Positions 11,446-30,720 of a stretch of DNA of 37,972 nucleotides are shown here, in pieces. The translations under genes were made by a program, and so were the position numbers. This DNA is from Octopus bimaculoides. Lineage: Eukaryota. Where the stretch lies: positions 43,050,182-43,088,153 of the forward strand of contig NC_068997.1 of NCBI RefSeq assembly GCF_001194135.2. Direction: 5' to 3'. Numbering within the stretch: position 1 is the stretch's first letter; each line of letters starts with the position of its first letter. Under the pieces are notes generated by a model, which made no database searches, was not told the origin of the DNA, and saw only the letters and a list, made by a program, of their open reading frames with translations.

Positions 11446-11507
11446 TGACCGTTGACTGAACACTATTCAATTTTTTTTCTCCGTGTTTTTCTCCTTGTCT
11501 CCGTATT

Positions 11508-11539
11508 CTTTCTGTTGAAGAGCGTAGCTCGAAACGTCA
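11508..11539 (+). ncRNA. Hammerhead-like motif variant, truncated by the assembly gap
   Basis: CTTT-CTGTTGA-A-GAGC-GTA-GCTC-GAA-ACGT-C-A|N. Stem II is perfect and the triplet is GUC, but the core reads CUGUUGA instead of CUGANGA. Confidence 0.4.
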
Positions 11540-11829
11540 NNNNNNNNNNNNNNNNNNNNNNNNNNNNNNNNNNNNNNNNNNNNNNNNNNNNNNNNNNNNN
11601 NNNNNATATATATATATATATATATAATCAAAGCTAATTCAAAGAGGTTTGAAACCTTCAGATATGGAACTTTAAGTGGGCGTGAAAGCATCTTGTTATC
11701 CTTTTCATGTGCGTGCGTGCATACGCGCGCCACCACATACAAACAAACCCCATTATAAACGTGCGAATGTGCATATAAGATAGATAGATAAATAGACAGG
11801 CAGACAGACAAACAGATAGACAGATAGAC

Positions 11830-11880
<51 letters not shown>

Positions 11881-12062
11881 TTGATTTATATAAGGGCAGT
11901 ACTATACAATAATGCCTCACGCTTAGGGGGACAATGCCCTTATATAAATTAAATTATATATATTTCTGGAAAAAGATGATAGGTTTTTTTTTCCTTATGA
12001 GGTTTTTTCACGCTAACTACTTGATAAATTCTTATAAAGTTTTTATCCTAACATTATATTAT

Positions 12063-12126
<64 letters not shown>

Positions 12127-12886
12127 TCACAGGCACACATTCATATGTATCCCTAAACGCTTTCTTTACAATTACCTACGCACATTTCTATGTTTATCAA
12201 ATCATTTATCCGGGCATTTCTTCTCTTAACATGCACAAACAAACTCAGCCAACTCAAAATAACACACAGTTGAAATAACTCTGATTTGGTGTAATAGTGA
12301 AAGTAGGCAGCGAAGTATTTGTTGTTGCAGTTCTGGTTTTATTGCTGTTGTTGTTATTGTCGTTGATAGTGGCTGGCGGTGGTGGTGTCTTAACTGTTCA
12401 ACTTACATTAGTGTTGAGAAGACTCTTTGTTCTTAAGTCCGATTAATCGAACAGAAACAAACGAAACTCGCATGCCATGAAGCAGCAACAGATTTTCTCT
12501 TTGAAGTCGTCAAGAAACCGTAATTGTCCCGTCTCTTCTTCATTTCTTTGGATCATTTTGATTGCCGTCAATTCTTAGCAATGAACTTAATAATTGGCTC
12601 GATTTTCGTCTCTTCTTCTTCGAAACTAATGCGTTGCAGTTTCGGTTTCCAGATAAAATAACACAAAGTCTTATTGTTGTTTATTGTCGTCGTCGTCGTC
12701 GTTGTTGTTGTTGTTGTTGTTATTGTTGTAGTAATTTACGGAGATTTACGGATGTCGTAAGTAACTATCCATTGATGTATCCAGCAGTAAATTGTCACCA
12801 AATGTTAGGCTACTTATGATGAAAATATTCACTAGTTTACAGATATTCTGAATGTGTTTGTTAAGCGGTCTTATTCCTATGTGTCA

Positions 12887-12952
<66 letters not shown>

Positions 12953-13202
12953 TTATCTATCTATTTATCTATCTATCAATCAATCTATCTATCTATCTAA
13001 CTATCTGTTGTTCTGTCAGCCTGCCTGTCTGCCTAACTGTCTATGTTTGTATGTGCGTGTATCTGTGTGTGTACAAATAGATATACCGGGTTAGTTATGC
13101 AGATAATAACAGTTAGAAAGACAGGTAAATTGATAGGCACACACATTTATACACAAACATACATGTATTTTTTTTTCGTGTGTGTAAATATGCGTGTGTA
13201 TG

Positions 13203-13258
<56 letters not shown>

Positions 13259-13391
13259 CGTATACACACACTCACACGAACACACACTCACACGAACACA
13301 CACGCTTACACACAAACACATACACTCACATCGCGTATGCATATATGTGCTTTTGTTTGTGTATGCATTTCAAGATCCAGTCGAAGTATTC

Positions 13392-13422
<31 letters not shown>

Positions 13423-14445
13423 ATCTGTCCATTTTCCTTCCTATCTATGAATGTGTGATATTATACGAGGCTTAAACTAAAGAACCTTCTACTTATTATC
13501 TAAAGACGGTCTACGATGCTGTGGCTTGCCTCTACTAACAACTAACTCCACTTACAGCGTTGCATGCGACACCTACAATAGCATCGTTGATTGAAATTGG
13601 AAAGAAATCTTTACAGTAGACACACACAAACACAAACCGGACACATATTACACGCATTGAAACGCTCTTCCAGATATACTTGTACACTCCTTTTCTCTAT
13701 TTCTCTCTCTCACACACACACAGACACACACACACACACATACACTCACATACACATACGTATATAGACAGAGCCTTCTGTTTTAGCCAATTATAATTAT
13801 AAGAATTATTGTTGTTGTTATTGTTATTGTTACTTTTTCTACTGTCCTTCGTGTAGCTGAATATGGGAACAACAATGGTGGAATTAGAACTGCGGGAGAA
13901 ATTTATCATAGTCTCATAAAAGTAATAAAGAGAAAATATAAATTAAGAGAGGACAGGCTGAAAATGGCTGCCCGTTTTAACTAATTCGCAAAGAGCTCGT
14001 TATGGTCGCTCATTCATCGGACTAGTAAAGCTGATTAGGACAGTTCTAATCCCTATCTCTGATAGTCACATCAAAGACGCGGCAGCGTAGGAAAAAACAC
14101 TTATTTTAGTAACCTTATTGATTCCACACATCGATATGTACGTGTGTGTGGGTGTGTGCGTGTGTATGTATACACACACATAAATAGATAGGTAGATAGA
14201 TAGACACATGCATACATACATGCATATGTATGTTTATACACGCACACACAAGCATGCAGACACATACACCTATACTTACATACATACACGCACACACAGA
14301 CATACAGACACATACACAAACACAAATACACACACGCACACACTCACATACACACTTATATGAGTGTGTATATATGTAAGCATATGGATGCCTGTATGTA
14401 TGTATGTATGTATGTTTGTGTGAACTCTCCTCCCCAACCATCTTT

Positions 14446-14550
<105 letters not shown>

Positions 14551-15494
14551 TATGCATAATATTAATAGATCCTTTGAAATTTCCTTCGTCAACGACGTAG
14601 ATCAAGTTACTTATCAAAGCAAACAATACGGCCATAACTGTAGTGTCTAATGAATTGGCAAGCTATCAATTCGACCAAAATGAGCAGTCTTGTTTATGGC
14701 ACCATTTGACGGTCTTTGTTTACAAATGCCATCCAAGGTATTTGTGTAAGATTGGTCAGTTTCTTCACTGCCTCGACCTCTACCACTACCACCATCACCA
14801 CCAACAACAACACCACCAACAACAACACCAGCAACGGTAAAGCCCGCAACAACAACAACAACAACAGTTGAAGCAGTAACGACAGCAGCACCTACCATTA
14901 TCGCGTATTTCGGCTGAAAATAACGACAGGAAAAAAACATACACAAGTAGTCACATTAGCAAAAGCTAAACAGTCTTTTTTATTCGTTTTTTCTTATTCC
15001 CCATCTCTCCCTTCTCTCTCTCTCTCCCTCTTACCCTCTCTTTCTCTTTTATGAATTACCTGTTAATAAAATGCTAAATTCGAGAGTATTCTAGCAAAGA
15101 TCTTAACTCATTAAAAGTTCTCGACATTTATTGCATCTGATCTTCAACAGAAATAGAATCTAACGACTTTTTTTTATTGTTTGTTCACAGTTTCAAAGAA
15201 CTCGTACTTCTTGTTTTTAACGTTTCCCATGAGTGGTTTTTGTTTCTTTAGGGTTTTACTTTAATTCTTTTAAACTTTTTAGATGTTTTTTTTTTTCTTC
15301 TTTTAACTATCTACGAACATTCCAGAAGATCAATCGGTACACTACAACGAACTTGTATAAATTTCGGGGAACTTCAAGCTTCTTCAAATCAACTTCAAAT
15401 CTAACTTTACCAAACATTTTTCGATTCTCTGTCATAGTATTGTAGAAGTATATATGGGCGTGTTTGTGTACTTGTATACGTGTATACATAAACG

Positions 15495-15670
15495 TATGTG
15501 GATCGTTGGCGATTTTTTTCCTTCGTCATCCTTTTCTCTTGGACTTTCTTCTGTCTTCTGTTTCTGAAGAAGAGCTTTGCTCGAAACGTAAAACTACCTT
15601 TCTTTCCTTCCTTGAGCGTCTGCTAATACTTTGCATGTACCACACCCTCGCGTTGTTTTTCTCTTCGGTT
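15495..15670 (+). mobile_element. ~180-bp dispersed repeat (Penelope-derived or retrozyme-like), paralog of 4850-5035
   Basis: Long shared blocks with the 4.9-kb copy: CTTTCCTTCC.TGAGCGTCTGCTAATACTTT.CATGTACCAC..CCTCGCGTT. Confidence 0.6.
15560..15594 (+). ncRNA. Minimal type I hammerhead ribozyme motif
   Basis: Stem I GTTT(15560-63)/AAAC(15591-94); core CTGAAGA(15564-70) plus one extra A; stem II GAGC/GCTC with TTT loop; GAA; palindromic stem III ACGT(15586-89); cleavage triplet GTA ending at 15590. Confidence 0.65.
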
Positions 15671-15674
15671 ATGT

Positions 15675-15707
<33 letters not shown>

Positions 15708-15898
15708 TATATTATATTATCTCTAACNNNNNNNNNNNNNNNNNNNNNNNNNNNNNNNNNNNNNNNNNNNNNNNNNNNNNNNNNNNNNNNNNNNNNNNNN
15801 NNNNNNNNNNNNNNNNNNNNNNNNNNNAAATGCACACACACACACACACACATGTATGTTCGAAAGTACGTACGTATGTATGTATGTATGTATGTATG

Positions 15899-16008
15899 TC
15901 ATTATTCAGTTTATTTAAAGATTTCTTGCCAATAGAGAAAGAACTGGTTTCTAACCTAGATCCAAGGCTCCTTCATTGGAATTTCAACATCAACAACAGG
16001 GTATTTTT
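15899..16008 (-). mobile_element. Short 3'-end copy of the second RLE LINE family inside a (TACA)n array
   Basis: Aligns with 3618-3730 (…AGATCCAA.GCTCCTTCA.TGGAATTTCAACA…ACAGGGTATTTT). (TATG)n on both sides. Confidence 0.65.
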
Positions 16009-16974
16009 GTATGTATGTATGTATGTATATATGTATGTATGTATGTATGCATGTATGTATGTATGTATGTATGTATGTATGCATGTATGTATGTATACGC
16101 ACACAAGTATGCATACCACGATTTCTCCAACTGTTTGAGACGCGGTGTCCCTGAGGAGCTTTCCTGGTGGGCTCATGCTCTCAAAACAAGTGGCACCGCA
16201 TCTCAAAAGTCGGTCTATCTCTTCATGGTGATAAAATGATTTCGCTCCGAATAGTCACTGACACTCTACAAAGATGTGGTTCACAATGAAATACTGCATT
16301 CACATCACAAGATCGCATCCAGAAAATTACCACTCAGTTTCTCTTTCTTACATACTGCGGCATCTGGCTGCAGACATGCACTCCTCTCTCTTTCAATTCT
16401 GTCTCTGCTGCAATGACGTCTGCTAAATCCTCATCAGCTTAACGGATTTATCATCCCAGTGCCCCACGATGCTATCAGACGGACAAGAACTTGTCACTCC
16501 AGAAGCGAGCTGCAAGCACACGGACAAAGTGATCATGGTCGGCTCTACCATAAGTTGACAATTGATTTATATTGGTGGTTACCTACCCTTTGTTACCTAC
16601 TCTTTCTATGATGCATGCGGTGGAAATTGCATGCATGAGGTGGGAATTGTCGGAGATATATCTGCTCGAAGTCGTGTGGCTTTGCACGTTCTCAATACTA
16701 CCGACAGATAATCCGTTGAAAGAAGTTCCAGTAAAAGGATGGCTCAAAACATTCTTCCTTTTCTTCAGTTAGGAATGGCTATTCCTTCCTTTTCTTTGCG
16801 AAATGTGTGTGTAAGTATGTATGCATGCATATATGTATGTACGTATGAATGCATGTGTGTTTATGTATGTATGCGTGTATATATGTAGAATTTTGTATAT
16901 ATGTGTGTGTGTGTGTGTGTGTATGTATGCGTGTGTGTGTATATATGTGTGTGTGTGTGTGTGTGTTTGTGTGT

Positions 16975-17160
16975 GTTCCGCCATCGCTTGAGAACCGGTG
17001 ATAGTTTGTTTACGCTCCGTAACATAGCGGTTCGGTAAAACTGACCGATAGAATAAGTGCCAAACTTAAAAAATAAACACAGGGATCGATTTGTTCGAGT
17101 AAACCCTTCAGCGCGGTGCTCCAGCATGGCAGCAGTCCAATGATTGAAACAAATAAGACA
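16975..17160 (+). mobile_element. SINE family B, 3' half
   Basis: CCATCGCTTGA.AACCGGTG...GTTTACG.TCCGTAAC.TAGCGGTTCGG...GATAGAATAAGT...GCGGTGCTCCAGCATGGC.GCAGTC.AATGA.TGAAACAA. Confidence 0.7.
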
Positions 17161-17223
17161 TGTTTCTTGTGAAATAAATGAATTTAGTTGGGGAATGGAA
17201 TTCATTTTTCGTTTTACTTTTTT

Positions 17224-18190
17224 NNNNNNNNNNNNNNNNNNNNNNNNNNNNNNNNNNNNNNNNNNNNNNNNNNNNNNNNNNNNNNNNNNNNNNNNNNNNN
17301 NNNNNNNNNNNNNNNNNNNNNNNNNNNNNNNNNNNNNNNNNNNNNNNNNNNNNNNNNNNNNNNNNNNNNNNNNNNNNNNNNNNNNNNNNNNNNNNNNNNN
17401 NNNNNNNNNNNNNNNNNNNNNNNNNNNNNNNNNNNNNNNNNNNNNNNNNNNNNNNNNNNNNNNNNNNNNNNNNNNNNNNNNNNNNNNNNNNNNNNNNNNN
17501 NNNNNNNNNNNNNNNNNNNNNNNNNNNNNNNNNNNNNNNNNNNNNNNNNNNNNNNNNNNNNNNNNNNNNNNNNNNNNNNNNNNNNNNNNNNNNNNNNNNN
17601 NNNNNNNNNNNNNNNNNNNNNNNNNNNNNNNNNNNNNNNNNNNNNNNNNNNNNNNNNNNNNNNNNNNNNNNNNNNNNNNNNNNNNNNNNNNNNNNNNNNN
17701 NNNNNNNNNNNNNNNNNNNNNNNNNNNNNNNNNNNNNNNNNNNNNNNNNNNNNNNNNNNNNNNNNNNNNNNNNNNNNNNNNNNNNNNNNNNNNNNNNNNN
17801 NNNNNNNNNNNNNNNNNNNNNNNNNNNNNNNNNNNNNNNNNNNNNNNNNNNNNNNNNNNNNNNNNNNNNNNNNNNNNNNNNNNNNNNNNNNNNNNNNNNN
17901 NNNNNNNNNNNNNNNNNNNNNNNNNNNNNNNNNNNNNNNNNNNNNNNNNNNNNNNNNNNNNNNNNNNNNNNNNNNNNNNNNNNNNNNNNNNNNNNNNNNN
18001 NNNNNNNNNNNNNNNNNNNNNNNNNNNNNNNNNNNNNNNNNNNNNNNNNNNNNNNNNNNNNNNNNNNNNNNNNNNNNNNNNNNNNNNNNNNNNNNNNNNN
18101 NNNNNNNNNNNNNNNNNNNNNNNNNNNNNNNNNNNNNNNNNNNNNNNNNNNNNNNNNNNNNNNNNNNNNNNNNNNNNNNNNNNNNNNNNN
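17224..18190. other. Assembly gap (largest of 13 N-runs)
   Basis: Other N-runs at about 375-864, 6401-6589, 9900-10518, 11540-11605, 15728-15827, 22357-22679, 23623-24310, 25440-26081, 29443-29913, 33836-34118, 35234-35478 and 36803-37008. Most are bordered by simple repeats. Confidence 0.99.
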
Positions 18191-18284
18191 TTTATAATCG
18201 CTCGTATCTTTTTCTTTCCTTTGCTTCCGCGCCGACGGTTTCCATCGTTTCGCCTTCCTCCTCGTTTTCTTTGTCATTTGGGCA

Positions 18285-18530
18285 GGGGTGCGTTGTGTCC
18301 TTGAGCAAGACACTTTATCCATGTTACCCCAGTCGACTCTGTTGGCAAAAATGAGTAGTGCGTATATTTCAAAGGGCCAGCTTTGTCACACTCTGTGTCA
18401 CACTGAAGCTCTCTGAGAACTACACGTATCTGTGGAGTGCTCAACTACTTGCACGTTAATTTCACGAACAGGCTTTTTCGTTGATCGGAACAACTGGAAA
18501 ACTCGTTGTCGTAAGCGACGGAGTGCCGGT
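18285..18530 (+). mobile_element. SINE family C (Meta-domain-like), headless copy
   Basis: GCGTTGTGTCCTTGAGCAAGACACTTTA...TTGTCACACTCTGTGTCA...CTGTGGAGTGCTCA.C.ACTTGCACGTTAATTTCAC matches 37670-37915. Confidence 0.7.
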
Positions 18531-19522
18531 TAATAAGAATATAGAATAGAATATCTCCTAGTATTTGTATCGCTCTTCTGAGTTCAAATCCTACCGTGAT
18601 CAAATTTGCTTTTACGTCCGCGGATCGATAAACTACCAGTCCAGGGTAGCGATACTAGAGATCAACTATTCTCGTTGCGCAGTGGGACTGATTCCGGAAT
18701 CATGTGGTTGGAATGCGAGCTTCTTACCATACAGTCTCACCTGATGAAAATAATTACTTTATAGCATTTTTCGGTGATCAACAAAACAAACTTGGGAAAG
18801 AAAATATATATCTCGCTCTTCATGGAATAAGGAAAAACTAAGAACCTTTTCGAGAAAGTAATTTTCTTGTTGTTTGCTAAAAAGATTCCGATAAGAACAA
18901 GCTCCAATATTACGAAGAACAACGACAATAGCAATTTCAATTAAAAACAAAATTAATGGAGTAATAAACAAAAGAAAAGTAATAATAACAGTAACATTAC
19001 CAATAAGATAGCACGATGTTATACTAGTAATTGTAATGTTTTTTTCCTTTTAATTGCTTTATAATATCTATAGGATTTATTTAAATCTTTAAATCATTAA
19101 AAGTGCTGCTAGCGCTTAAATATATGGCTATGAGCAGTGAAATAGCCAACTTAAATATGACGACGGGGAAAAAGTAATAACGAACAAAACATGGCTGCGG
19201 GTGGAAGATGACGAACAGATGGCTACAGCGTGGGAGAGAAATAGCGAAAATAACATGACGATGGGTGGTGGGGTGAGGAAAATTGTAAACAAATTACGAC
19301 AAAAGACAAAATAAATAATGCCACAAGAATAGCGATCTTTGTTCAATATTTTGTCGTTGTTAGTTTAATTCACTAAATAGAAAGATAAAAACATGTGTTC
19401 ATACAAATAAATACGTATTATACAGACAATTTGCAAACTTAATGCTTAACATTGTATAAAAGCTTATACATACGCTATATGCATGCGTGCAATTATCTAT
19501 CTATCTATCTATAATAACTAAT

Positions 19523-19841
19523 TGGCACTTCATCGGGTAGAACAACGAGGGTTCCAGTTGATCCGATAAATGGAATAGCCTACGCACGAAATACTCAAGT
19601 GTTTGAGTATTCCATGGAAACGTGTACTCTTAACGTAGTTCACAAGGATATTCAATTTGGCACAGAGTGTGACAAGGCTGTCCCTATGAATTACAGGTAC
19701 TGCTAATTTTTGCCAGCTGAGTGGACTAGAACAACAGGAAATAAAATGTCTTACTCAAGAGACACATCGCGCAGGCGGAATCGAACTCACGATCTTGCGA
19801 TCATGAGCCGAATACCCCAAACCACCAGGCTACGCGCCTTC
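19523..19841 (-). mobile_element. SINE family C, near full-length
   Basis: Reverse complement GAAGGCGCGTAGCCTGGTGGTT...GTGAGTTCGATTCC shows a tRNA-like head with A/B boxes. The body matches 37600-37917. Confidence 0.75.
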
Positions 19842-19939
19842 ACACACACACACATAATCACACACATACATACATATATACACACAAACGCAAGCACGCA
19901 CGCACATATGCACACACATGTGCACACACACACACACAC

Positions 19940-20085
<146 letters not shown>

Positions 20086-20897
20086 GTTTCTCGCTTTGTC
20101 CCCATCGGTCTCAATTTCTTTATACTTACCCTCTTTATTTCTTTCTTGCCCTCTTACCTTTCCTCTTTCACCACTTTTCCTCCGGAAAACATTGGCGGGA
20201 TACTGAGGTAAAGCTGAAAGAAAGCAAGGGTCCAACTAGAGAGAAGCAGAAAAGACATTGCAGTATCGAGGAAAGAGGAGTAAAATCGTCGACGTCCTAA
20301 ACTCCATCGAGAGCAAAGGACTTAGTGAATCTTTACAAAATTGGAAGGGAACACGATATGATGTAGTCTTAGTAACCTCTAAAAAAAAAAGGCAGGGTGG
20401 TCGCTGTAGAAATACTTTTCGTAATAGGTCTACTCAATCAGTTTTGTCTGGGGCTAAACAACAACAACAACAAACAAACAAACAAACAAATAATAACGAC
20501 AGAATGATGACACTTGCTTTCATATGTCAGATGAAACACGAACCGTTCGTCAAGTTCATTATGCAAGTTATTGAATGAAATAATGTAATATAATCAATAC
20601 TTGGCAAGATTTATAAAACGTCAGAAACTTTCCAAAGATGTGCATGTTTTTGAATAAATATTTTTCTTAACTATATTTATATTGATTTTATTAATAAAGT
20701 GTTGGGGGTGGATTTTATGAAAAAAATTTTATTGACAAATTAATATAAAGCTTTGCTCATGATCAACATTTTTAAGCATTTTGGTAATTTTTTAATACGT
20801 TTATCTTATTAAGTTTATTGTTAAAATAATATCGATTAATACAATTTTTCTTTTTTCTTTTCTCTTCTTTTTTTTGTTTCATTTATTTCATGTTTAG

Positions 20898-21465
20898 TTG
20901 GACAGTAATAACGTCAACAGTGGTAGGTACCCAGGCCATGAAGAAATTATGGAATTTTTACGGAAACTGGGTCTCCTGGCCAACACTATCGAAAGTACAG
21001 CTTCAATTGACGACACCGACTCAGAATCTGCTGAAAGAATGAAAAAAGTTAACCCCTACAGTTTCCAAGGTACCAGAGGCAAAAGATTAAACGCAAACAG
21101 TTTCATGGGTTCCCGAGGTAAAAGAGTCCTCGTTAATGACAAACGGACTGTCAGTGCTAACGCTTTCGTCGGATCGAGGGGTAAACGTTTGGTTACCTTA
21201 TTCGGTGAAAAGCCCCAACTAAACGATCTTACGGGAGTCATTGACAAAAAATCAGGTGCTTTAGCATTCGTCCCAACAAGAGGCAGAAGACAATCAACCA
21301 ATGACGAACTTGCTTACATGGGTCCGATGTTATTGAGAGAAGGCCGAGGAATGAATTCGTTATCGTTTGGTCCCCCAAAAGGCAAAAAATACAGTCCACT
21401 TGACTTCATTGGATCGCGTGGCAAGAAAAGTACTCTTGAAGATTATGTGTTAAATAACCAAAACG
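20898..21465 (+). CDS. TKRP: Internal coding exon of a tachykinin-related peptide (TKRP) precursor; six predicted amidated peptides
   Basis: Pyrimidine tract ~20845-20880 and AG at 20896-20897 (phase 0). Open frame LDSNNVNSG...KK-VNPYSFQGTR-G-KR-LNANSFMGSR-G-KR-VLVND-KR-TVSANAFVGSR-G-KR...KK-SGALAFVPTR-G-RR...RG-MNSLSFGPPK-G-KK-YSPLDFIGSR-G-KK-STLEDYVLNNQN. Donor G|GTAAT at 21465/21466 (phase 1). FxGxR-amide is the protostome TKRP signature. The peptides match the Octopus vulgaris oct-TKRP set as I recall it. The ORF-track tail (FIYLFIY...) is intronic (ATTT)n. Confidence 0.95.
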
Positions 21466-21473
21466 GTAATTGC

Positions 21474-21474
21474 T

Positions 21475-21517
<43 letters not shown>

Positions 21518-21561
21518 TGTATTCATTTATTTATTTATTTATTTATACATTTATTTATTTA
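21474..21561 (+). repeat. (ATTT)n microsatellite just inside the TKRP intron
   Basis: Read directly; begins about 8 nt after the GT donor. Confidence 0.95.
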
Positions 21562-21654
21562 TCAGAATGATAAGCATCTGTGAACCTCACTAACACTCTC
21601 AAGTTACGGCGGATTAATGTTTGTTAGACTTGGGTGAACTTTTACCGTGCATAT

Positions 21655-22100
21655 TTATGATCAGATGTGTTCCAGCTGTGGCCATCTTTTGTCTTTTATT
21701 GAAATAGTTAATCTCGAACTACTTTATTCACTGTGTCCTTATTATATTAAGAAGCGAGATTTTGCTGTTGTTTCTAGCAAGTAGATCAAGTCACCGTATA
21801 GAAACACCCGCAAGATGCAGTAGATGTCGTTATTACTGTTGCTGTTCTTATAGATGTTGTTGTAATTGATACTGTTGCTATACATGTTATTGTTGCTGTT
21901 GTAGATGCTGCAGTTGTTGTTGTTTAGCCTCAGTTCAGTACTGATGGATAAGACCTACAGTCAATCTATGTAGCAGCCAAGACCATCTCTTGTTTTTCAA
22001 GTATGGTTTATCTGGAACTTCATTATTCAATGTGTCTTTCTCTTCTTTAAAAGTTGGTACGGTGGGTTTTTTAAGCTGAAAATCTTGCAAATGTGAGATG
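21655..22100 (+). mobile_element. Two decayed copies of an unclassified interspersed repeat (third copy at ~26750-26945, minus)
   Basis: Shared GAC..ATGATCA...CCA.C..TG.CCATC...TTATTCA.TGTGTC...TGCT.TTTCTAG motifs across the three sites, judged by eye. Confidence 0.4.
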
Positions 22101-22679
22101 TCAACAAACATTGATGGCCACGATGGGTAGAATCTAATGGATCAACTTGACCTAAATGTAATAATCTGAAAGAAAACCATGGGTTACAATAGAGGAAACT
22201 TTAGAGGTCTTCAGTCAAAGATAGGAACGACAGGCGAAAGATTTTAATAATGGTTTTAGGATTTGAGACTCAACACAGATTATGAGATGTGGAGATAGGA
22301 TTGAGTAAAATATGGACCAGATATGCTAGTTTCGTTCTCTCTCTCTCTCTCTCTCTNNNNNNNNNNNNNNNNNNNNNNNNNNNNNNNNNNNNNNNNNNNN
22401 NNNNNNNNNNNNNNNNNNNNNNNNNNNNNNNNNNNNNNNNNNNNNNNNNNNNNNNNNNNNNNNNNNNNNNNNNNNNNNNNNNNNNNNNNNNNNNNNNNNN
22501 NNNNNNNNNNNNNNNNNNNNNNNNNNNNNNNNNNNNNNNNNNNNNNNNNNNNNNNNNNNNNNNNNNNNNNNNNNNNNNNNNNNNNNNNNNNNNNNNNNNN
22601 NNNNNNNNNNNNNNNNNNNNNNNNNNNNNNNNNNNNNNNNNNNNNNNNNNNNNNNNNNNNNNNNNNNNNNNNNNNNNNN

Positions 22680-23003
22680 TATTTCTGTCTCCTGATCTTT
22701 CTTTGTTTCTCAGACCAAGCTTTCTCCATTCACTACACGAGCCGTGCGCTTTCGCGCAGCTCGCTTAAGTTTTTCATGCTGGATATGTGCTCTCTCAAAA
22801 GTGTCGATCCCCTCCTTAACCTGCTTCCTCCATCTGTGGCGATGACAGGCATTGTTCTCCCTGTCAGTGTCCTGCATATCACAGGCCTTTAATGAGGACT
22901 TGACACAGTCCTTAAATCGCAGCCTTGGTTTCTGCCGGAGTCTCCTTCCATTCACAAGTTCTCCATATAGCAACTGCTCAGGAATCCCGCTATCCTTCAT
23001 TCT
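22680..23003 (-). mobile_element. RTE-clade LINE fragment, ORF C-terminal region
   Basis: RMKDSGIPEQLLYGELVNGRRLRQKPRLRFKDCVKSSLKAC...RHRWRKQVKEGIDTFE...KRAARK fits the RTE pattern RM.D.RiPK.lLYGEL..G.R..G.P..RfKD.lK...R..WR..v..G...FE. Confidence 0.85.
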
Positions 23004-23509
23004 AATACATACATACATACATACATACATACATACTGCATCCCAAAGATGGAAACCGGCTCCCTCATTAGTGGGAGATTTATAATAATTAAAAAATAGA
23101 AGAGACATAAAGACATATGCATATGTATACAAGTGAAGTAAATATATGATTGCGTGCGTTCGAGAATTCTTTTTTCTTTTGTCTTGTGCACCAACTGGTT
23201 TCTAATTTGTTTTAAACCTCATTCAGAGCAGGTGCAGATATATGAATTTCCCCAAAATCTATAAAAGTTTTGAGACTCGACTTTTTGCGTTCTGTATATA
23301 GTCACACTAAAATTTACTTATAGGATATTTACACACACACACAAACTCACATACACACACACACACACACCCTTACTCAAACACGGAGGCAATATATCAA
23401 ACGAGCTAGTATAGGTATGACGGAACAAATGCATAAAATAGTAGTTAACTAGTATCAAATCAATTTATAACATACTGAAGAGAAATGCAAGTATATTTCC
23501 AGATATATA

Positions 23510-23560
<51 letters not shown>

Positions 23561-24594
23561 TTGCTATTATGTTAAACTATCGTATGTCCAAACTTGGCCA
23601 AATGCATTTTTTTCAATATCTANNNNNNNNNNNNNNNNNNNNNNNNNNNNNNNNNNNNNNNNNNNNNNNNNNNNNNNNNNNNNNNNNNNNNNNNNNNNNN
23701 NNNNNNNNNNNNNNNNNNNNNNNNNNNNNNNNNNNNNNNNNNNNNNNNNNNNNNNNNNNNNNNNNNNNNNNNNNNNNNNNNNNNNNNNNNNNNNNNNNNN
23801 NNNNNNNNNNNNNNNNNNNNNNNNNNNNNNNNNNNNNNNNNNNNNNNNNNNNNNNNNNNNNNNNNNNNNNNNNNNNNNNNNNNNNNNNNNNNNNNNNNNN
23901 NNNNNNNNNNNNNNNNNNNNNNNNNNNNNNNNNNNNNNNNNNNNNNNNNNNNNNNNNNNNNNNNNNNNNNNNNNNNNNNNNNNNNNNNNNNNNNNNNNNN
24001 NNNNNNNNNNNNNNNNNNNNNNNNNNNNNNNNNNNNNNNNNNNNNNNNNNNNNNNNNNNNNNNNNNNNNNNNNNNNNNNNNNNNNNNNNNNNNNNNNNNN
24101 NNNNNNNNNNNNNNNNNNNNNNNNNNNNNNNNNNNNNNNNNNNNNNNNNNNNNNNNNNNNNNNNNNNNNNNNNNNNNNNNNNNNNNNNNNNNNNNNNNNN
24201 NNNNNNNNNNNNNNNNNNNNNNNNNNNNNNNNNNNNNNNNNNNNNNNNNNNNNNNNNNNNNNNNNNNNNNNNNNNNNNNNNNNNNNNNNNNNNNNNNNNN
24301 NNNNNNNNNNTATATATATATATACATATATATATGACGGACTCTCCCATCGAAGACCACGTAAGAACGTTCAGCTTTTGCCGAACGACCTGCACAAATA
24401 ATTTTGTTTATAATGATCAAATGCTCGTGCCGTACATAGCTCACTCTCTCCATCAAATCGATGTTGTCTGAACAGGTGCACGGAGTACCATGCGTCAGGT
24501 GTCGAAGTAATCACAGACCAAGGTGTTTTGCTCAAAAACACAACGCGCCATCCGGCCTAGGATAGATAGATAGATAGATAGATACATACATACA

Positions 24595-24627
<33 letters not shown>

Positions 24628-25059
24628 CTGTCAGGCTCCTATCTATTGGCTAAGTAGAGGAGGCTCCAGTAATGTTTGACAAAGCTGTGGGGAAGGCAGC
24701 TCTTCTAGGATAAAGATATTGTCACATGAAACTTGTAGTGAAAATAGTACCAGTCACCTTGCATTGCTTGGTGGGGGAACATACAATGGTGACTAAGAGT
24801 GTGCCAAAATTGTTGTACAACTTTTTATCACTTAAATCCAATGACGCGCAGATGTCTCACTATAATGCATGACAGGTTATTACCTGACAAGATAAGGCAA
24901 TAATCATTTATGTATGTAGTGAAAGAAACTGAAAAATTTTGTAGGGCATACGTATTATTCAAATTGCTTGAATAAGCTATACATTTGGCGAAAACTCGAA
25001 GCCGGTTATCAATACATTTATAGCAACTATCAGAAAATTATATCGTGTAATTTATTCAT

Positions 25060-25275
25060 TATCTTTCCTGAGCCATAGGCACATGAGGCTGGTTTCCCGG
25101 ATTCTATGGTGTATATATTTTCTATCTGGACGGGATGCCACTCCGTCACAGTATCACATGCTTTTGCCAACTGGCTGGACTGGAGCAACATGAAATGCAG
25201 CGTTTTGCTCACGAGCACAACGCTTCGCCCGATCCAGGTATCGAAGCTACAATCTTACGAACATGGGTGCAAAAC
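25060..25275 (-). mobile_element. SINE family C-related copy (head plus Meta-like domain)
   Basis: Reverse complement has TTCGATACCTGG...GCGTTGTGCTCGTGAGCAAAACGC...TTGCTCCAGTCCAGCCAG.TGGCAAAAG. Confidence 0.55.
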
Positions 25276-25401
25276 ACACGCCTATACATATTTATATAAA
25301 TGTATGTGCTTATACATATATTTATATATTTACATGCACACAAATATAAATATACATACATTTATATATGATATATGTCGACATCATGTGTGTGTGTGTG
25401 T

Positions 25402-25439
<38 letters not shown>

Positions 25440-27399
25440 NNNNNNNNNNNNNNNNNNNNNNNNNNNNNNNNNNNNNNNNNNNNNNNNNNNNNNNNNNNNN
25501 NNNNNNNNNNNNNNNNNNNNNNNNNNNNNNNNNNNNNNNNNNNNNNNNNNNNNNNNNNNNNNNNNNNNNNNNNNNNNNNNNNNNNNNNNNNNNNNNNNNN
25601 NNNNNNNNNNNNNNNNNNNNNNNNNNNNNNNNNNNNNNNNNNNNNNNNNNNNNNNNNNNNNNNNNNNNNNNNNNNNNNNNNNNNNNNNNNNNNNNNNNNN
25701 NNNNNNNNNNNNNNNNNNNNNNNNNNNNNNNNNNNNNNNNNNNNNNNNNNNNNNNNNNNNNNNNNNNNNNNNNNNNNNNNNNNNNNNNNNNNNNNNNNNN
25801 NNNNNNNNNNNNNNNNNNNNNNNNNNNNNNNNNNNNNNNNNNNNNNNNNNNNNNNNNNNNNNNNNNNNNNNNNNNNNNNNNNNNNNNNNNNNNNNNNNNN
25901 NNNNNNNNNNNNNNNNNNNNNNNNNNNNNNNNNNNNNNNNNNNNNNNNNNNNNNNNNNNNNNNNNNNNNNNNNNNNNNNNNNNNNNNNNNNNNNNNNNNN
26001 NNNNNNNNNNNNNNNNNNNNNNNNNNNNNNNNNNNNNNNNNNNNNNNNNNNNNNNNNNNNNNNNNNNNNNNNNNNNNNNNNTATATATATATATATATAT
26101 ATATTGAGATATCACATATATATTCACGCACATAAAAGATCAATTTTGTTCGCGATTGCCTCAAAGTGATAACCCACACTTGAGTAAAGACTTCTTTCAT
26201 AGTTGAACAACAGACAAAAAAAAAGAACAAGTAAATCTTAGCAAATATTTACAAGCCAATAAAAACGAAGCATTGTAGTAAGACGGTCACGCTCCGTTGG
26301 ATTGGCTTTCAAATATTAACATCTATTCAAATGAATCAGTGCACCATCTTCCGCCCTCTGTGTGTTTTCTTTGGAATATCCTTCCTTCCCACTACAACCA
26401 ATACCATTTCATTCTAATACTACTACTAAAAGATCTGAAATCAATGTCGTGTTCACAGTCCGTGTAACAACGTAACAACCAGCATGGCGTCCATAAGTAA
26501 GCCGCACCGCAGTTCTTTAAAGAGCGAGAGGGGTGGAGGAAGGAGAGAGAGAATAAGATGAAGAAAAAGCAGGCAAGTGAAAAGGAGAGAAAGGCTGGGA
26601 GAGTGAGAGAGTAAGAGAAGGACACCTACGATAACAGATCACTGTACCAATATAACATTATACCACTACACTACCATACAAACACACCAACGCACTATTG
26701 CACCCATATTCCATCTCTCCCCCACTACTGCACCAACCAACCTATCAGGATGCTTCTAGAGGGTCACTCAATTTACTAGAAATAGCAACCAAATTTCCCC
26801 TTGAATCGTAGCCTACTGTCTTAAAAGATAAATATCATATTGAACTCTATGATCTTAGATGCACACTGAAGGCAGAAAGAAGGATGGTCACAGATGGGTT
26901 GTCTTTGATCACAGGTCTGTTGTATTAGGGGTAAACCGGAGTTACACAACGATTTCCGCAAACATTGTACTAATATACACTAACATACAACCATACAAAT
27001 GCATTACCACGTCCTTATACTGATTTGTTCATTTCGCAATCACGTGTTTCTCTGTTCGACGCCAATGCACTGGCTTTGCTCATGTTTTCTACCAGAGTCA
27101 CGCATTGACCAAAGTTTTCTGAATGGATTTTGTTAGATGAAAATTGAAAGGAAACCCGTAATTGACTGGTGAAATTAGATGAGCAGCCTGCTAAACCGAA
27201 TTTCGCATAAAAAAATTATATTAAAATGAAAATGTTCATAAAATCGTTGGACAAAGATTCACGTTGGACAAAGATATCCCAGCATGAACGATGATCAATG
27301 ACTGAAACAAGTAAAAATAAAATATATACATACATACATACATACATACATACATACATACATACACACGCACACACACACACATACACACACACACAT

Positions 27400-28440
27400 A
27401 ACTTAGAGATGTTTCGTCCAAAGATTGGTCTAGGCCATGTCTAACTTAATAGCACCACCTGAAAGGATTAGCTAAATCCTTTTTTAAGTCAATTTTTGTG
27501 GTATCATGGTCCATTCGAATAGGGAGTTCTTGTTCAGTGAGTTGTATCCTGGTATAGGTGGCTTATCTGTTATTCCTTGAAGAAATTTGTCTAGATTCCG
27601 TTTAAAGGTGATGGGATCCTTTTCCTCTTTGATCTGTTTGGGGACAATATTAAATAGGGCAGAGCCTGTTGAGGAAAAGAAATTGTGTTGCAGCGTATTT
27701 ATGTGTTGTGATCCTGAATTGGGTAGGGGATGCATGGACCGTGGTCCTAGCATTGGTTGAATTTTGAAGCGAATGTCGTTTGGGCAATGCTGATGGTAGA
27801 TTATCCACATCGTGCATATGATGTATCGCTCACGACAGCGCTGGAGAGAATAGAGTTTCAACGCTTTAAGGTGGTCCCAATAATCGAGATCAGTCATGCC
27901 CTTAATTTTTTTAGCAAATGTCCTCTGGGATGATTCAATTTTCAAAGTGTTTTGTTTTGTATGGGGACAGTAGTATTCGAGGTGTGACCGTACAACGGAG
28001 GAGAAAAAAGAATGATGACACCTTGTTCTCTGGACCGGAAGGTTCTTAAGACCCAAGAGCTCATCCTACGAACTATCGACCTTATTGTTGATGTAGGCAC
28101 TCCAGCTGAGATTGTTGTCAGCAATTACTCCTAGGCCTCTGATATTATTAGATACTGTGAGTGGTGACCCCGAAGGAAGAGATTATGGTTGTTTTACTAA
28201 TCTTTCTTCCAAAATGCATCAGCTCAAATTTTTCCTCATTTAGTTGCGTTTTGTTTTTGTCTTCCCATTGACTAACAGCATGTAAATCAGACTGGAGTTC
28301 AGTTCGGTCTCCTTCTTCATTGATGATTTTCTGGAGCTTGGAGTCATCAGTGAATATTTACACTTTGCCGTGTTTTATGACGCTGGAAAGGTCGTTTATA
28401 TAGGCTATAAAGAGAAGCGGGCCCAAGACAGTCTTCTGAG

Positions 28441-28443
<3 letters not shown>
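27400..28443 (-). mobile_element. Decayed CR1/L2-group LINE: reverse transcriptase C-terminal half plus 3' end
   Basis: Minus strand [18 protein letters not shown] (RT motif B), stop, IFTDD (motif C, 28357-28343), LQSDL..V.QW, QLNEEKFELMHF, RGLGVIADNNLSW, VRSHLEY, ESSQRTF, LKLYSLQRCRERY, FKRNLDKFL. In-frame stops are present. Confidence 0.88.
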
Positions 28444-28474
<31 letters not shown>

Positions 28475-28517
28475 ACACACATACACACATACACACACGC
28501 ACACACACACATGTATA

Positions 28518-28553
<36 letters not shown>

Positions 28554-28621
28554 AATACATATACACATACACATATATACATATATATACATGCATATAT
28601 ATATATGCATATACATATATA

Positions 28622-28686
<65 letters not shown>

Positions 28687-28734
28687 CAAGGCTGACCCAT
28701 TAAAAATACAAGTAGTACTGAGTAGAATGGAGCA

Positions 28735-28845
28735 CCGCGAGAAATAATACCTTACTCAAGGACAGAACGCCCTGCCAGAAATTGAACTCACGACCTTGGT
28801 TGTTAGCCGAATACACTAACCACTAAACCACACGCCTTCACGGTA
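28735..28845 (-). mobile_element. SINE family C head fragment
   Basis: Reverse complement GAAGGCGTGTGGTTTAGTGGTTAGTGTATTCGGCT...GTCGTGAGTTCAATTTCTGG...GTTCTGTCCTTGAGTAAGG. Confidence 0.65.
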
Positions 28846-29308
28846 ACGTACCATGCGTACAACAAATTGTGTTAGGTGCCTGTATAGTCGCGAGCAAACA
28901 GACTCTCCCCTTGGCCTGCGCATCAAATTGAATTCTTTATCGACGCCTATCAGATCTTCCTGTTGATATTATATAGTCTTATGCCGTCAATCGCATTGTT
29001 GGCTTTTAATATAGAAAGGACTGTATATATTGATATTTCATCTGAGCATTGATTCTGACGGTATTACTTCTTGTCTAAGACCATCGGTGTGTGCGTGTGT
29101 GTGGTCTGTGTGTGTATAGACACGCACACGCACACGCACACACACGCACACACACACACACACATACACAAGCAAACATACACAGACATCTATATATTTA
29201 TTTTTATCAGTTTAGCTTTCTCTCTCTATATCTTTCTATCTTTCTCTCAATATATATGTGCATAAATTTATAAGTATACACCCACACACACACATACACA
29301 GACATACA

Positions 29309-29350
<42 letters not shown>

Positions 29351-29913
29351 CATACATACACACACATTCGTACATATATACATATATGTGTATGTACGTA
29401 TGAATATGATTATGGATATATATATATATATATATATATATANNNNNNNNNNNNNNNNNNNNNNNNNNNNNNNNNNNNNNNNNNNNNNNNNNNNNNNNNN
29501 NNNNNNNNNNNNNNNNNNNNNNNNNNNNNNNNNNNNNNNNNNNNNNNNNNNNNNNNNNNNNNNNNNNNNNNNNNNNNNNNNNNNNNNNNNNNNNNNNNNN
29601 NNNNNNNNNNNNNNNNNNNNNNNNNNNNNNNNNNNNNNNNNNNNNNNNNNNNNNNNNNNNNNNNNNNNNNNNNNNNNNNNNNNNNNNNNNNNNNNNNNNN
29701 NNNNNNNNNNNNNNNNNNNNNNNNNNNNNNNNNNNNNNNNNNNNNNNNNNNNNNNNNNNNNNNNNNNNNNNNNNNNNNNNNNNNNNNNNNNNNNNNNNNN
29801 NNNNNNNNNNNNNNNNNNNNNNNNNNNNNNNNNNNNNNNNNNNNNNNNNNNNNNNNNNNNNNNNNNNNNNNNNNNNNNNNNNNNNNNNNNNNNNNNNNNN
29901 NNNNNNNNNNNNN

Positions 29914-29956
<43 letters not shown>

Positions 29957-30510
29957 TGTGTGTATATTTATTTATTTATTTATTTATGTATGTATGTATG
30001 TATATATGTATGTATGTATGTGTTTGTATTTGTATATGCATCATAGCGTTTTAAAATCAAAGTCATATAAATGAAGCCAGGTACATTTGGCATGCATGAA
30101 CATCCGTTCTAGTTGTCGCGCACTAAAACGAAAGTTTGATATCAAAATCTGATGTGTAAATTGCATTTAGCTACATATTTTGCTACCTCTAAGAAACAAA
30201 GAACTAAGAAAGAAACTTTGTTAGGTAATAAATAACTATTAATGGAATTTGAAGCGTCAAAACTTCACAGTGACCAGTGGTTTCGCGCTGATACGGGAAT
30301 CATCAGGCAAGTAAAGATTAAAAAAAGAACCCTCTGTTTATTGGTGATTGGTCTGGGTTAAAGTTATGTCGAGGGTGTGTCACTAGTGAAGGGTATGTAT
30401 TGGGGGAGTTTGTTGATGTGTATTGGTGCGTGTCTATGTGTGAGCAGTGTGTGTATGTATGTTAGTTTGGACAACATAGATTTTTGCTCAGAAAATATAT
30501 AGGTTGAAAA

Positions 30511-30720
30511 CGGTGGTTCTTAGGCGAGGTCCATATGACCCTTAGGAGTTCACATTATTTTTTGCTGTAAAATATTTTAACAATTTTTCGTACAGTTCCT
30601 AATATTATTTAGCTACAAAAATATAATAGGATGTTTTAAACATCAAATAACTATGGAGATCTAGTTGAGTAAAATAGGAGTCAAGGGGTTCCATAGGCAA
30701 AAAATGTTTGAGAACCACTG
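30511..30720. mobile_element. hAT-type MITE with 8-bp target-site duplication
   Basis: Left end CGGTGGTTCTTA; right end reverse-complemented CAGTGGTTCTCA (10/12 match). Flanks GTTGAAAA (30503-30510) and GTTTAAAA (30721-30728) match at 7/8. Confidence 0.75.

What the first reader, a model, noticed from the sequence alone, without database searches (positions are those of the whole stretch)
20898..21465. Octopus tachykinin-related neuropeptide precursor exon hidden in repeat-dense DNA
This is the only host coding exon in 38 kb, with six Gly-basic amidation cassettes. From memory of the O. vulgaris set, peptides I, II and V are identical. Three differ: TVSANAFVGSR (recalled FLGSR), SGALAFVPTR (recalled SDALAF) and YSPLDFIGSR (recalled GSK). 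This suggests the ortholog from another Octopus species with new peptide variants. The gene family is known, but a fragmented neuropeptide gene in gapped sequence is easily mis-annotated.
Basis: partly seen in the sequence, partly recalled or inferred. Interest (0 to 1): 0.7.

Follow-up and report, generated by a model that had tools for sequence, protein, structure and literature searches.

The report
Octopus tachykinin-related peptide gene, exon 2

Summary
Window 20898-21465 (+) is a 568-nt exon with a canonical AG acceptor and GT donor. It encodes residues 50-238 of Octopus bimaculoides XP_014780997.1 at 100% identity. RefSeq calls this 264-aa protein 'uncharacterized protein LOC106876803'. 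The window is O. bimaculoides chromosome CM046617.1 and lies entirely inside this roughly 91-kb, three-exon gene.

An assembled 1595-nt transcript contig splices exactly at 20898 and 21465. The protein is 94% identical to the cloned O. vulgaris tachykinin-related peptide (oct-TKRP) precursor. The exon carries six of the seven peptide cassettes; the seventh is in exon 3, about 32 kb downstream of exon 2 and outside the window.

- Peptide VI is identical to the O. vulgaris peptide, so the recalled 'GSK' was wrong.
- Only two peptide cores differ. In III, Leu becomes Val; Val is shared with other octopods and Argonauta, so it is probably ancestral. In IV, Asp becomes Gly, which is specific to this lineage.
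- The other long ORFs in the window are gap artefacts, translated microsatellites or transposon remnants.

Verdict: a known gene of a known family. Interest is low.

The parts
1..20897 (+). 3' part (20.9 kb) of intron 1 of the TKRP precursor gene. The whole intron is about 57.9 kb. It ends in a polypyrimidine tract and the AG acceptor at 20896-20897.
   Evidence: The transcript contig L002 maps to the genomic locus L001 in three blocks. Exon 1 ends at L001 10147 and exon 2 begins at L001 68047, which is window 20898.
20898..21465 (+). Exon 2 (568 nt) of O. bimaculoides LOC106876803, the TKRP precursor. It encodes residues 50-238 and the first base of codon 239. It enters in phase 0 and leaves in phase 1.
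   Evidence: tblastn of XP_014780997.1 gives 100% identity over 189 aa. L002 is 100% identical over bases 504-1073, which is exon 2 plus the 2-nt AG overlap at the acceptor, and its match stops at the exon boundaries. Against another octopus species the exon is 95.6% identical with no gaps, while the intron flank is 82.1% identical with 47 gap columns. dN/dS is 0.29-0.41.
21042..21086 (+). Cassette I: KK / VNPYSFQGTR (21048-21077) / G / KR. The peptide core is identical to O. vulgaris.
21087..21125 (+). Cassette II: LNANSFMGSR (21087-21116) / G / KR. The peptide core is identical to O. vulgaris.
21141..21188 (+). Cassette III: KR / TVSANAFVGSR (21147-21179) / G / KR. It has Val where O. vulgaris and O. 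sinensis have Leu and Callistoctopus minor has Ile.
   Evidence: Val is also present in P0009, P0010, Argonauta hians P0002 and the distant precursor P0003.
21246..21290 (+). Cassette IV: KK / SGALAFVPTR (21252-21281) / G / RR. It has Gly where all other octopods listed have Asp. The C-terminal site is dibasic RR where the others have RS.
   Evidence: The same residues appear in the independent transcript assemblies P0010 and P0011.
21336..21389 (+). Cassette V: REGR-G / MNSLSFGPPK (21351-21380) / G / KK. The upstream dibasic RR of O. vulgaris is RG here.
   Evidence: The processing consequence is inferred, not shown.
21390..21428 (+). Cassette VI: YSPLDFIGSR (21390-21419) / G / KK. The peptide core is identical to O. 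vulgaris.
21466..37972 (+). 5' part (16.5 kb) of intron 2. The whole intron is about 32.1 kb. It starts with the GT donor at 21466-21467, followed directly by a (TTTA)n microsatellite at 21474-21562.
   Evidence: Exon 3 starts at L001 100754, beyond the end of the window (L001 85121).

Best explanation
Window 20898-21465 (+) is exon 2 of the single-copy Octopus bimaculoides ortholog of the oct-TKRP (tachykinin-related peptide) precursor gene, RefSeq LOC106876803 / XP_014780997.1.

Shown here:
- The gene has three exons spread over about 91 kb.
- Exon 1 carries the 5' UTR and residues 1-49, which have a hydrophobic, signal-peptide-like N-terminus.
- Exon 2 carries the acidic spacer and six peptide cassettes.
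- Exon 3 carries the seventh cassette, the stop codon and the 3' UTR.
- The mRNA is spliced exactly at 20898 and 21465.

Inferred from the established prohormone pathway and from the O. vulgaris and Aplysia work:
- The prepropeptide enters the secretory pathway.
- Prohormone convertases cut at the KK, KR and RR sites.
- Carboxypeptidase removes the basic residues.
- Peptidylglycine alpha-amidating monooxygenase converts each C-terminal Gly into an amide.
- This yields about seven F-X-G/P-X-R/K-amide peptides.
- These peptides act on a rhodopsin-type TKRP receptor in brain and visceral ganglia, for example to stimulate gut contraction.

Compared with O. vulgaris, the O. bimaculoides set differs in these ways:
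- Peptide III has Val in place of Leu.
- Peptide IV has Gly in place of Asp.
- The site after peptide IV is dibasic.
- The dibasic site before peptide V is lost. Cleavage there may instead occur at the R-E-G-R monobasic site, which would give a Gly-extended peptide V. This last step is inference only.
For: - Sequence identity. The exon translation equals residues 50-238 of XP_014780997.1. That protein sits in the same 90% identity cluster as the cloned O. vulgaris 'tachykinin-related peptide precursor' BAD26598.1 and the Callistoctopus minor 'minor tachykinin precursor' BAB40308.1. The full-length alignment to BAD26598.1 is 94% identical.
- Source of the window. The window is 100% identical, with the same gaps, to O. 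bimaculoides CM046617.1.
- Expression and splicing. The 1595-nt contig L002 encodes the exact 264-aa protein. It aligns to the genome in three collinear blocks separated by about 57.9 and 32.1 kb, with GT-AG at all four boundaries. A second set of transcript contigs (L003, L004; 98.9% identical) stops matching at the same boundaries.
- Selection. The exon is 95.6% identical and gap-free against another octopus species, while the adjacent intron is 82.1% identical with indels. dN/dS is 0.29-0.41.
- Motif statistics. There are six cassettes in one frame and 0.03 expected by chance.
- Family membership. A profile search of 1.84 billion representative proteins gave 72 hits. Of the 70 non-query hits, 65 carry at least two F-x-[GAP]-x-R-G-[KR] cassettes.
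- Function in relatives. Seven oct-TKRPs and their receptor have been characterised in O. vulgaris. The receptor is most sensitive to II and III and insensitive to substance P, and the peptides have contractile effects on the gut (PMC5736919). In Aplysia the C-terminal Arg and amidation are necessary for receptor activation (PMC11365428).
Against: Nothing found argues against the gene call. The limits are as follows.
- There is no peptide-level evidence for O. bimaculoides, such as mass spectrometry.
- The tissue of origin of the transcript run SRR32601320 is unknown to me.
- The signal peptide was judged by eye only.
- No Pfam family covers this precursor, so membership rests on orthology and the repeated motif.
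- Peptides IV (FVPTR) and V (FGPPK) depart from the strict FXGXR consensus.
- The processing outcome at the RG site before peptide V is untested.
Confidence: 0.97

Rival explanations
1. It is a non-functional copy of the TKRP gene, either a pseudogene or a decaying duplicate, that happens to keep an open frame.
For: It sits in very repeat-rich, gapped sequence with transposon remnants nearby.
Against: A spliced transcript that is 100% identical across all three exons derives from exactly this locus. The frame is intact and there is only one copy in the 110-kb locus. The exon is much better conserved than its flanks, with dN/dS below 0.5. No second O. bimaculoides relative appeared in the protein searches.
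Confidence: 0.01
2. It is a gene for a salivary-gland (venom) tachykinin of the Oct-TK or eledoisin kind, not an endogenous neuropeptide gene.
For: One database entry for the ortholog is named 'minor tachykinin precursor'. Cephalopods do make salivary tachykinins (PMC6880623).
Against: Salivary tachykinins end in FXGLM-amide (PMC6880623). None of the six cassettes does; all end in R or K before the Gly. The orthologous O. vulgaris precursor is the TKRP precursor, expressed in nervous tissue such as the gastric ganglion (PMC5736919).
Confidence: 0.01
3. It is a chance open frame in low-complexity DNA, with no gene present.
For: Many long ORFs in this window are artefacts of N runs and microsatellites.
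Against: The frame is 100% identical to a RefSeq protein and a transcript, carries six motif cassettes against 0.03 expected by chance, and has canonical splice sites.
Confidence: 0

Closest known systems
Octopus vulgaris tachykinin-related peptide (oct-TKRP) precursor, BAD26598.1 / UniProt Q6F6I8 (Kanda et al. 2007, FEBS J 274:2229; cited from PMC5736919 and PMC6880623, as the paper itself is not held)
   Same: It is the ortholog. Its length is 265 aa against 264 aa, with 94% identity. The order of the seven cassettes is the same, and the cores of peptides I, II, V, VI and VII are identical.
   Different: III is FLGSR in O. vulgaris and FVGSR here. IV is SDALAF in O. vulgaris and SGALAF here. 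The site after IV is GRS in O. vulgaris and GRR here. The site before V is RR in O. vulgaris and RG here. There are also a few spacer substitutions and a one-residue deletion in exon 1.
Callistoctopus (Octopus) minor 'minor tachykinin precursor', BAB40308.1 / Q9BLK5
   Same: The architecture is the same. It is 90% identical over exon 2 and 91% over the full length.
   Different: C. minor has FQGSR in I, FIGSR in III, VNSLSFGPTR in V, YSAVDFIGSR in VI and FMPSR in VII.
Other molluscan and protostome TKRP precursors (Aplysia apTKRP, Crassostrea gigas TK, Urechis, insect TKRPs)
   Same: All are multi-copy FXGXR-Gly-dibasic cassettes in a secreted precursor. The amidated C-terminal Arg is required for receptor activation in Aplysia (PMC11365428). 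The profile search recovers such precursors.
   Different: Outside cephalopods only the cassettes align, and the spacers are unrelated. Copy number differs: 3 in Aplysia and 7 here. Two octopus peptides depart from the consensus (FVPTR and FGPPK).
Cephalopod salivary tachykinins (Oct-TK I/II, eledoisin)
   Same: They are also named tachykinins and are also made by octopods.
   Different: They are FXGLM-amide peptides made in salivary glands and aimed at the prey's receptors (PMC6880623). The exon here encodes no such C-terminus, so it is a different gene.

Membership tests
Protostome tachykinin-related peptide (TKRP) precursors | Several peptide copies ending in F-X1-G-X2-R, each followed by Gly (the amide donor) and a basic cleavage site | tested here: met
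   There are six cassettes in exon 2. I, II, III and VI are strict FXGXR. IV is FVPTR and V is FGPPK, the same departures as in the characterised O. vulgaris precursor. The seventh cassette (FIPSR-GKR) is in exon 3.
Protostome tachykinin-related peptide (TKRP) precursors | Orthology or clear homology to an experimentally characterised TKRP precursor | tested here: met
   The protein is 94% identical over its full length to O. vulgaris BAD26598.1 and falls in the same 90% identity cluster. In the profile search, 65 of 70 hits carry at least two cassettes.
Protostome tachykinin-related peptide (TKRP) precursors | Secretory precursor with an N-terminal signal peptide | tested here: inconclusive
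   Exon 1, outside the window, encodes MYAIRVSSSRR followed by a hydrophobic stretch ISCFLQVFLLFSGLLNSLQWGAFA. This looks like a signal peptide by eye. No signal-peptide predictor was available.
Protostome tachykinin-related peptide (TKRP) precursors | Expressed as a spliced mRNA | tested here: met
   Logan contig L002 (SRR32601320) encodes the exact protein and splices at 20898 and 21465 with GT-AG introns.
Protostome tachykinin-related peptide (TKRP) precursors | Mature C-terminally amidated peptides are produced and activate a TKRP receptor | not testable with these tools
   This needs peptidomics and receptor assays. It has been shown only for O. vulgaris (as cited in PMC5736919) and Aplysia (PMC11365428).
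Cephalopod salivary tachykinins (Oct-TK / eledoisin type) | C-terminal FXGLM-amide | tested here: not met
   There is no F-X-G-L-M-G cassette in the exon or in the full precursor.
Any Pfam-A family | Match at or above the gathering score | tested here: not met
   There were no Pfam hits for the 264-aa precursor at E <= 0.1. Pfam has no model that captures this precursor.

The most novel reading that the evidence does not exclude
The changes specific to the O. bimaculoides lineage alter the set of mature peptides, not just a residue or two. These changes are also present in the closely related transcript P0010. Loss of the RR site before peptide V (REGR-G-MNSL...) could give a Gly-extended or much longer N-terminally extended form of peptide V. 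The RS to RR change could raise the yield of the Gly-variant peptide IV. That would be a small natural experiment in neuropeptide repertoire evolution between sister octopus lineages.
Probability: 0.35. Interest if true: 0.2.

Novelty: already known. Interest (0 to 1): 0.1.

Why it matters
It matters only modestly.
- The gene family, its peptides and its receptor have been characterised in O. vulgaris since 2007.
- The exact O. bimaculoides protein is already a correct RefSeq model.
- The practical value is in annotation. LOC106876803 in O. bimaculoides, the O. vulgaris genome models ('hypothetical predicted protein') and the O. sinensis partial model could all be named as the TKRP precursor.
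- The O. sinensis model could also be extended to three exons.
- Researchers using O. bimaculoides as the laboratory octopus should synthesise the species' own peptides III (Val) and IV (Gly) rather than the O. vulgaris forms.
- They should also check the true N-terminus of peptide V.

Tried and rejected
- Pfam scan of the precursor gave no family.
- A PDB sequence search gave no match at E <= 1. I did not predict a structure, because a multi-cassette prohormone is not expected to fold, so nothing could be learned from one.
- Rfam at gathering threshold and ARAGORN on the whole window found nothing.
- Kanda et al. 2007 is not in the held library. Full-text searches for the six O. vulgaris peptide strings and for the gene and protein accessions returned nothing useful. 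The O. vulgaris comparison therefore rests on the deposited protein BAD26598.1, and peptide numbering follows the order in the precursor.
- O. vulgaris genomic DNA could not be fetched. P0005 is not on record, and the P0004 gene range of 138.9 kb is too long. Intron comparison was therefore limited to about 720 bp of intron 1 from an unnamed octopus species (L005).
- The repeat finder on the whole window was swamped by N runs and microsatellites. Only families D12-D17 there are informative.
- I tried to identify the species behind the Logan runs from the literature. This produced only a conflicting record.
- I considered and rejected three readings: pseudogene, salivary tachykinin gene and chance ORF (see the rival explanations).

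Full report
**1. The observation**

Window 20898-21465 on the + strand is open in one frame. It translates to a 189-residue sequence with six cassettes of the form peptide-Gly-basic-basic (coordinates). The motif F-x-[GP]-x-[RK]-G-[KR]-[KRS] occurs six times. All six are in this frame between 21063 and 21428, and none is in any other frame of the window. In 200 shuffles of the window the mean count was 0.03 and the maximum was 1.

The stretch is bounded by a polypyrimidine tract and ...TGTTTAG upstream of 20898, and by GTAATT downstream of 21465. Its GC content is 43.1%, against 36.3% for the window.

There are 13 N runs totalling 5289 bases. Tandem repeats cover 19.5% of the resolved bases, and most gaps abut microsatellites.

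**2. What it is**

A search of the 5.8-billion-protein collection gave three clusters. The top cluster (E = 6e-104) holds these entries:
- the cloned O. vulgaris 'tachykinin-related peptide precursor' (BAD26598.1 / Q6F6I8);
- the Callistoctopus minor 'minor tachykinin precursor' (BAB40308.1);
- two O. vulgaris genome models named 'hypothetical predicted protein';
- a partial O. sinensis model;
- O. bimaculoides XP_014780997.1, 'uncharacterized protein LOC106876803', 264 aa.

tblastn of XP_014780997.1 against the window gives 189/189 identities for residues 50-238 at 20898-21464. Nothing credible matches residues 1-49 or 239-264.

The window itself is 100% identical, block by block and with the same gaps, to positions 47150-85121 of locus L001. 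L001 is CM046617.1:43003033-43113865 of assembly GCA_001194135.2. The window is therefore O. bimaculoides chromosome sequence, at roughly CM046617.1:43,050,182-43,088,153 by my arithmetic.

**3. Gene structure and expression**

A 1595-nt Logan contig (L002, run SRR32601320) encodes the exact 264-aa protein. It aligns at 100% identity to L001 in three collinear blocks: 9643-10147, 68047-68614 and 100754-101275. The boundaries read CAG|GTACTT...TTTAG|TTGGAC and AAACG|GTAATT...TTACAG|ATTCAC, so both introns are GT-AG.

Intron 1 is about 57.9 kb and intron 2 about 32.1 kb. The window lies wholly inside the gene. It holds the last 20.9 kb of intron 1, exon 2, and the first 16.5 kb of intron 2.

Exon 1 supplies the 5' UTR and residues 1-49. 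This part has a basic N-terminus followed by a hydrophobic stretch, which looks like a signal peptide by eye only. Exon 3 supplies ...DSPKENYERR-ASLHNTFIPSR-GKR-ST, the stop codon and a 3' UTR with AATAAA signals.

A second pair of transcript contigs (L003 and L004, protein P0010, 98.9% identical in the exon) stops matching at exactly the same two boundaries.

**4. Constraint**

I compared the exon with a genomic contig from another, unnamed octopus species (L005). The exon is 95.6% identical with no gap columns. The adjoining 743 aligned columns of intron 1 are 82.1% identical with 47 gap columns. Nei-Gojobori dN/dS for exon 2 is 0.29-0.41 in the three pairwise comparisons. That is purifying selection of the moderate strength expected for a prohormone whose spacers are free to vary.

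**5. Family membership**

Pfam has no model for this precursor and the PDB has no relative. I built a profile from the window exon and the three proteins returned (alignment A2) and searched 1.84 billion representative proteins. It found 72 proteins at E <= 1e-3. Of the 70 that were not in the query, 65 carry at least two F-x-[GAP]-x-R-G-[KR] cassettes. This is the protostome TKRP-type precursor family.

The literature held here defines TKRPs by the FX1GX2R-amide C-terminus. It distinguishes them from the FXGLM-amide salivary tachykinins of cephalopods, Oct-TK and eledoisin (PMC6880623). None of the six cassettes ends in FXGLM, so this is the endogenous neuropeptide gene and not the salivary one.

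**6. How it most likely works**

Shown here: a spliced mRNA encodes a precursor with seven Gly-basic cassettes.

Inferred from the established prohormone pathway:
- The signal peptide is removed.
- Prohormone convertases cleave at KK, KR and RR.
- Carboxypeptidase trims the basic residues.
- Peptidylglycine alpha-amidating monooxygenase converts the exposed Gly to a C-terminal amide.

Evidence from relatives:
- Seven oct-TKRPs have been characterised in O. vulgaris. The cloned receptor oct-TKRPR responds best to II and III and not to substance P. The peptides contract oesophagus, crop and stomach, and the transcript and receptor are present in the gastric ganglion (PMC5736919, citing Kanda et al. 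2007).
- In Aplysia, the C-terminal Arg and the amide are necessary for receptor activation. Alanine at the X1 position raises EC50 (PMC11365428).

**7.

| Peptide | O. bimaculoides (this window) | O. vulgaris | Note |
|---|---|---|---|
| I | VNPYSFQGTR | identical | |
| II | LNANSFMGSR | identical | |
| V | MNSLSFGPPK | identical core | Upstream site differs |
| VI | YSPLDFIGSR | identical | Recalled 'GSK' was wrong |
| VII | ASLHNTFIPSR (exon 3, outside window) | identical | |

- Peptide III. Val is also present in P0009, P0010, Argonauta hians and the distant cephalopod precursor P0003, and C. minor has Ile. Val is therefore probably the ancestral state, and Leu is the O. vulgaris/O. sinensis peculiarity.
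- Peptide IV. Gly occurs only in O. bimaculoides and the near-identical P0010 and P0011, so it is a lineage-specific change.
After IV, O. vulgaris has G-RS (monobasic) and O. bimaculoides has G-RR. Before V, O. vulgaris has REGRR|MNSL and O. bimaculoides has REGRG-MNSL. Both are present in the independent transcript assemblies, so they are not assembly errors.
- If cleavage now occurs after the remaining Arg, which has an Arg at P4 (R-E-G-R), peptide V would be GMNSLSFGPPK-amide. This is inference only.

**8. 'The only host coding exon in 38 kb'**

No other part of the TKRP precursor matches the window. Most of the 52 ORFs of at least 110 aa are read through N runs or are translated microsatellites. 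The exceptions are these:
- ORF 27484-28056 (-), 190 aa. It continues, after a frameshift, from a fragment at 28202-28441 (-) that matches the C-terminal third of Pfam RVT_1. The match has E = 1.2e-4 and 22.3 bits, below the gathering score because only profile positions 124-195 are present. Its relatives are uncharacterised proteins scattered across a mantis shrimp, another O. bimaculoides locus and environmental contigs. I read it as the tail of a 5'-truncated non-LTR retrotransposon.
- ORF 34779-35120 (+). It matches Pfam GIY-YIG (E = 4e-5, above the gathering score). This is the endonuclease type carried by Penelope-like elements; that link is my own knowledge and was not tested.
- ORF 22710-23132 (-). 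It resembles retrotransposon ORF2 tails from memory but has no Pfam hit, and I did not follow it up.

**9. Annotation status and novelty**

The O. bimaculoides model is structurally correct, since it equals the transcript, but it is unnamed. The O. vulgaris genome models are 'hypothetical'. The O. sinensis RefSeq model (XP_029655686.2, 194 aa, partial) covers only this exon and starts four codons inside the intron. Bacterial-style ORF callers on genomic contigs read through the donor into the (TTTA)n microsatellite, as in P0009, which ends ...NNQNGNCFIYLLIN.

No paper in the held library mentions LOC106876803 or XP_014780997. Even so, the gene family, the peptides, the receptor and this exact protein sequence are all public. 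I rate the finding as already known and of low interest.

**10. Verdict**

Confidence in the gene call is 0.97. The most novel reading left open is that the processing-site changes alter the mature peptide set in the O. bimaculoides lineage (probability about 0.35, modest interest).

Noticed in passing
window 27484-28441 (-): This looks like a remnant of a 5'-truncated, frameshifted non-LTR retrotransposon. A fragment at 28202-28441 matches the C-terminal third of Pfam RVT_1 (E = 1.2e-4, below the gathering score). The 190-aa ORF at 27484-28056 continues from it. That ORF's relatives are uncharacterised proteins in a mantis shrimp, another O. bimaculoides locus and environmental contigs. Upstream it is cut off by (AC)n/(AT)n microsatellites at 28441-28684.
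   Followed up: yes
window 34779-35120 (+): A 113-aa ORF matches Pfam GIY-YIG (E = 4e-5, 24.3 bits, above the 22.6 gathering score). It is probably the endonuclease tail of a Penelope-like retroelement; that link is from my own knowledge. It occurs once in the 110-kb locus.
   Followed up: partly
window 22710-23132 (-): A 140-aa ORF next to a gap has a sequence (…GIPEQLLYGELVNGRRLRQKPRLRFKDCVK…) that I recall as typical of the C-terminal tail of invertebrate LINE ORF2 proteins. It has no Pfam hit and occurs once in the locus.
   Followed up: partly
window 1242-1410, 7512-7613, 34126-34294; 18314-18522 and 37696-37915; 18678-18743 and 32709-32774: These are short interspersed repeat families, 75-90% identical between copies. 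The first has 18 matches and the third has 7 in the 110-kb gene locus, on both strands. They look SINE-like. ARAGORN and Rfam call nothing in the window.
   Followed up: partly
window 21466-21562: A (TTTA)n microsatellite of about 22 copies starts 8 bases after the exon-2 donor. It keeps the exon's frame open to 21593. ORF callers that ignore splicing therefore produce a 199-231-aa protein ending in FIYLFIYL..., as seen in the public protein P0009 from genomic contigs of another octopus.
   Followed up: yes
whole window; gaps at 375-864, 6401-6589, 9900-10518, 22357-22679, 25440-26081, 29443-29913, 33836-34118 and others: Of the window, 13.9% is N, in 13 gaps. Most gaps are flanked on one or both sides by (AT)n, (AC)n, (CT)n, (AAT)n or poly-C. 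These are assembly breaks at microsatellites, kept from the short-read assembly in the chromosome-scale version.
   Followed up: yes
loci L003 and L004 (Logan contigs of SRR16213285 and SRR16213284): These runs yield a full-length octopus TKRP transcript (P0010, 98% identical to O. bimaculoides, sharing SGALAFVPTR and REGRG). Yet a 2026 paper lists SRR16213284 as RNA-seq of the mealybug Planococcus ficus from Mexico (PMC13340311). Either the accession in that paper is a slip, or the run is contaminated with RNA from an octopus close to O. bimaculoides. This is unresolved.
   Followed up: partly
protein P0007 (O. sinensis XP_029655686.2): This RefSeq 'partial' model of 194 aa consists of this exon only. 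It begins FHVQ-LDSNN..., four codons inside the 3' end of intron 1. It lacks the signal peptide exon and peptide VII.
   Followed up: yes
protein P0004 (O. vulgaris CAI9735013.1, 276 aa): This is an alternative O. vulgaris genome model. It replaces the final ...FIPSR-GKRST with ...FIPSR-DPVTSFTKQEKSFCAL, which would remove the amidation and cleavage signal of peptide VII. The O. vulgaris gene range is 138.9 kb. Whether this isoform is real was not tested.
   Followed up: no
protein P0002 (Argonauta hians, 251 aa), alignment A1 columns 210-236: The Argonauta precursor lacks the whole peptide IV cassette, a 27-residue gap. It also has an Asn-rich insertion near the exon 1/2 boundary. Peptide V there ends FGPTR, as it does in C. 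minor and P0009. The FGPPK ending is therefore a derived state of the O. vulgaris/O. bimaculoides group.
   Followed up: partly
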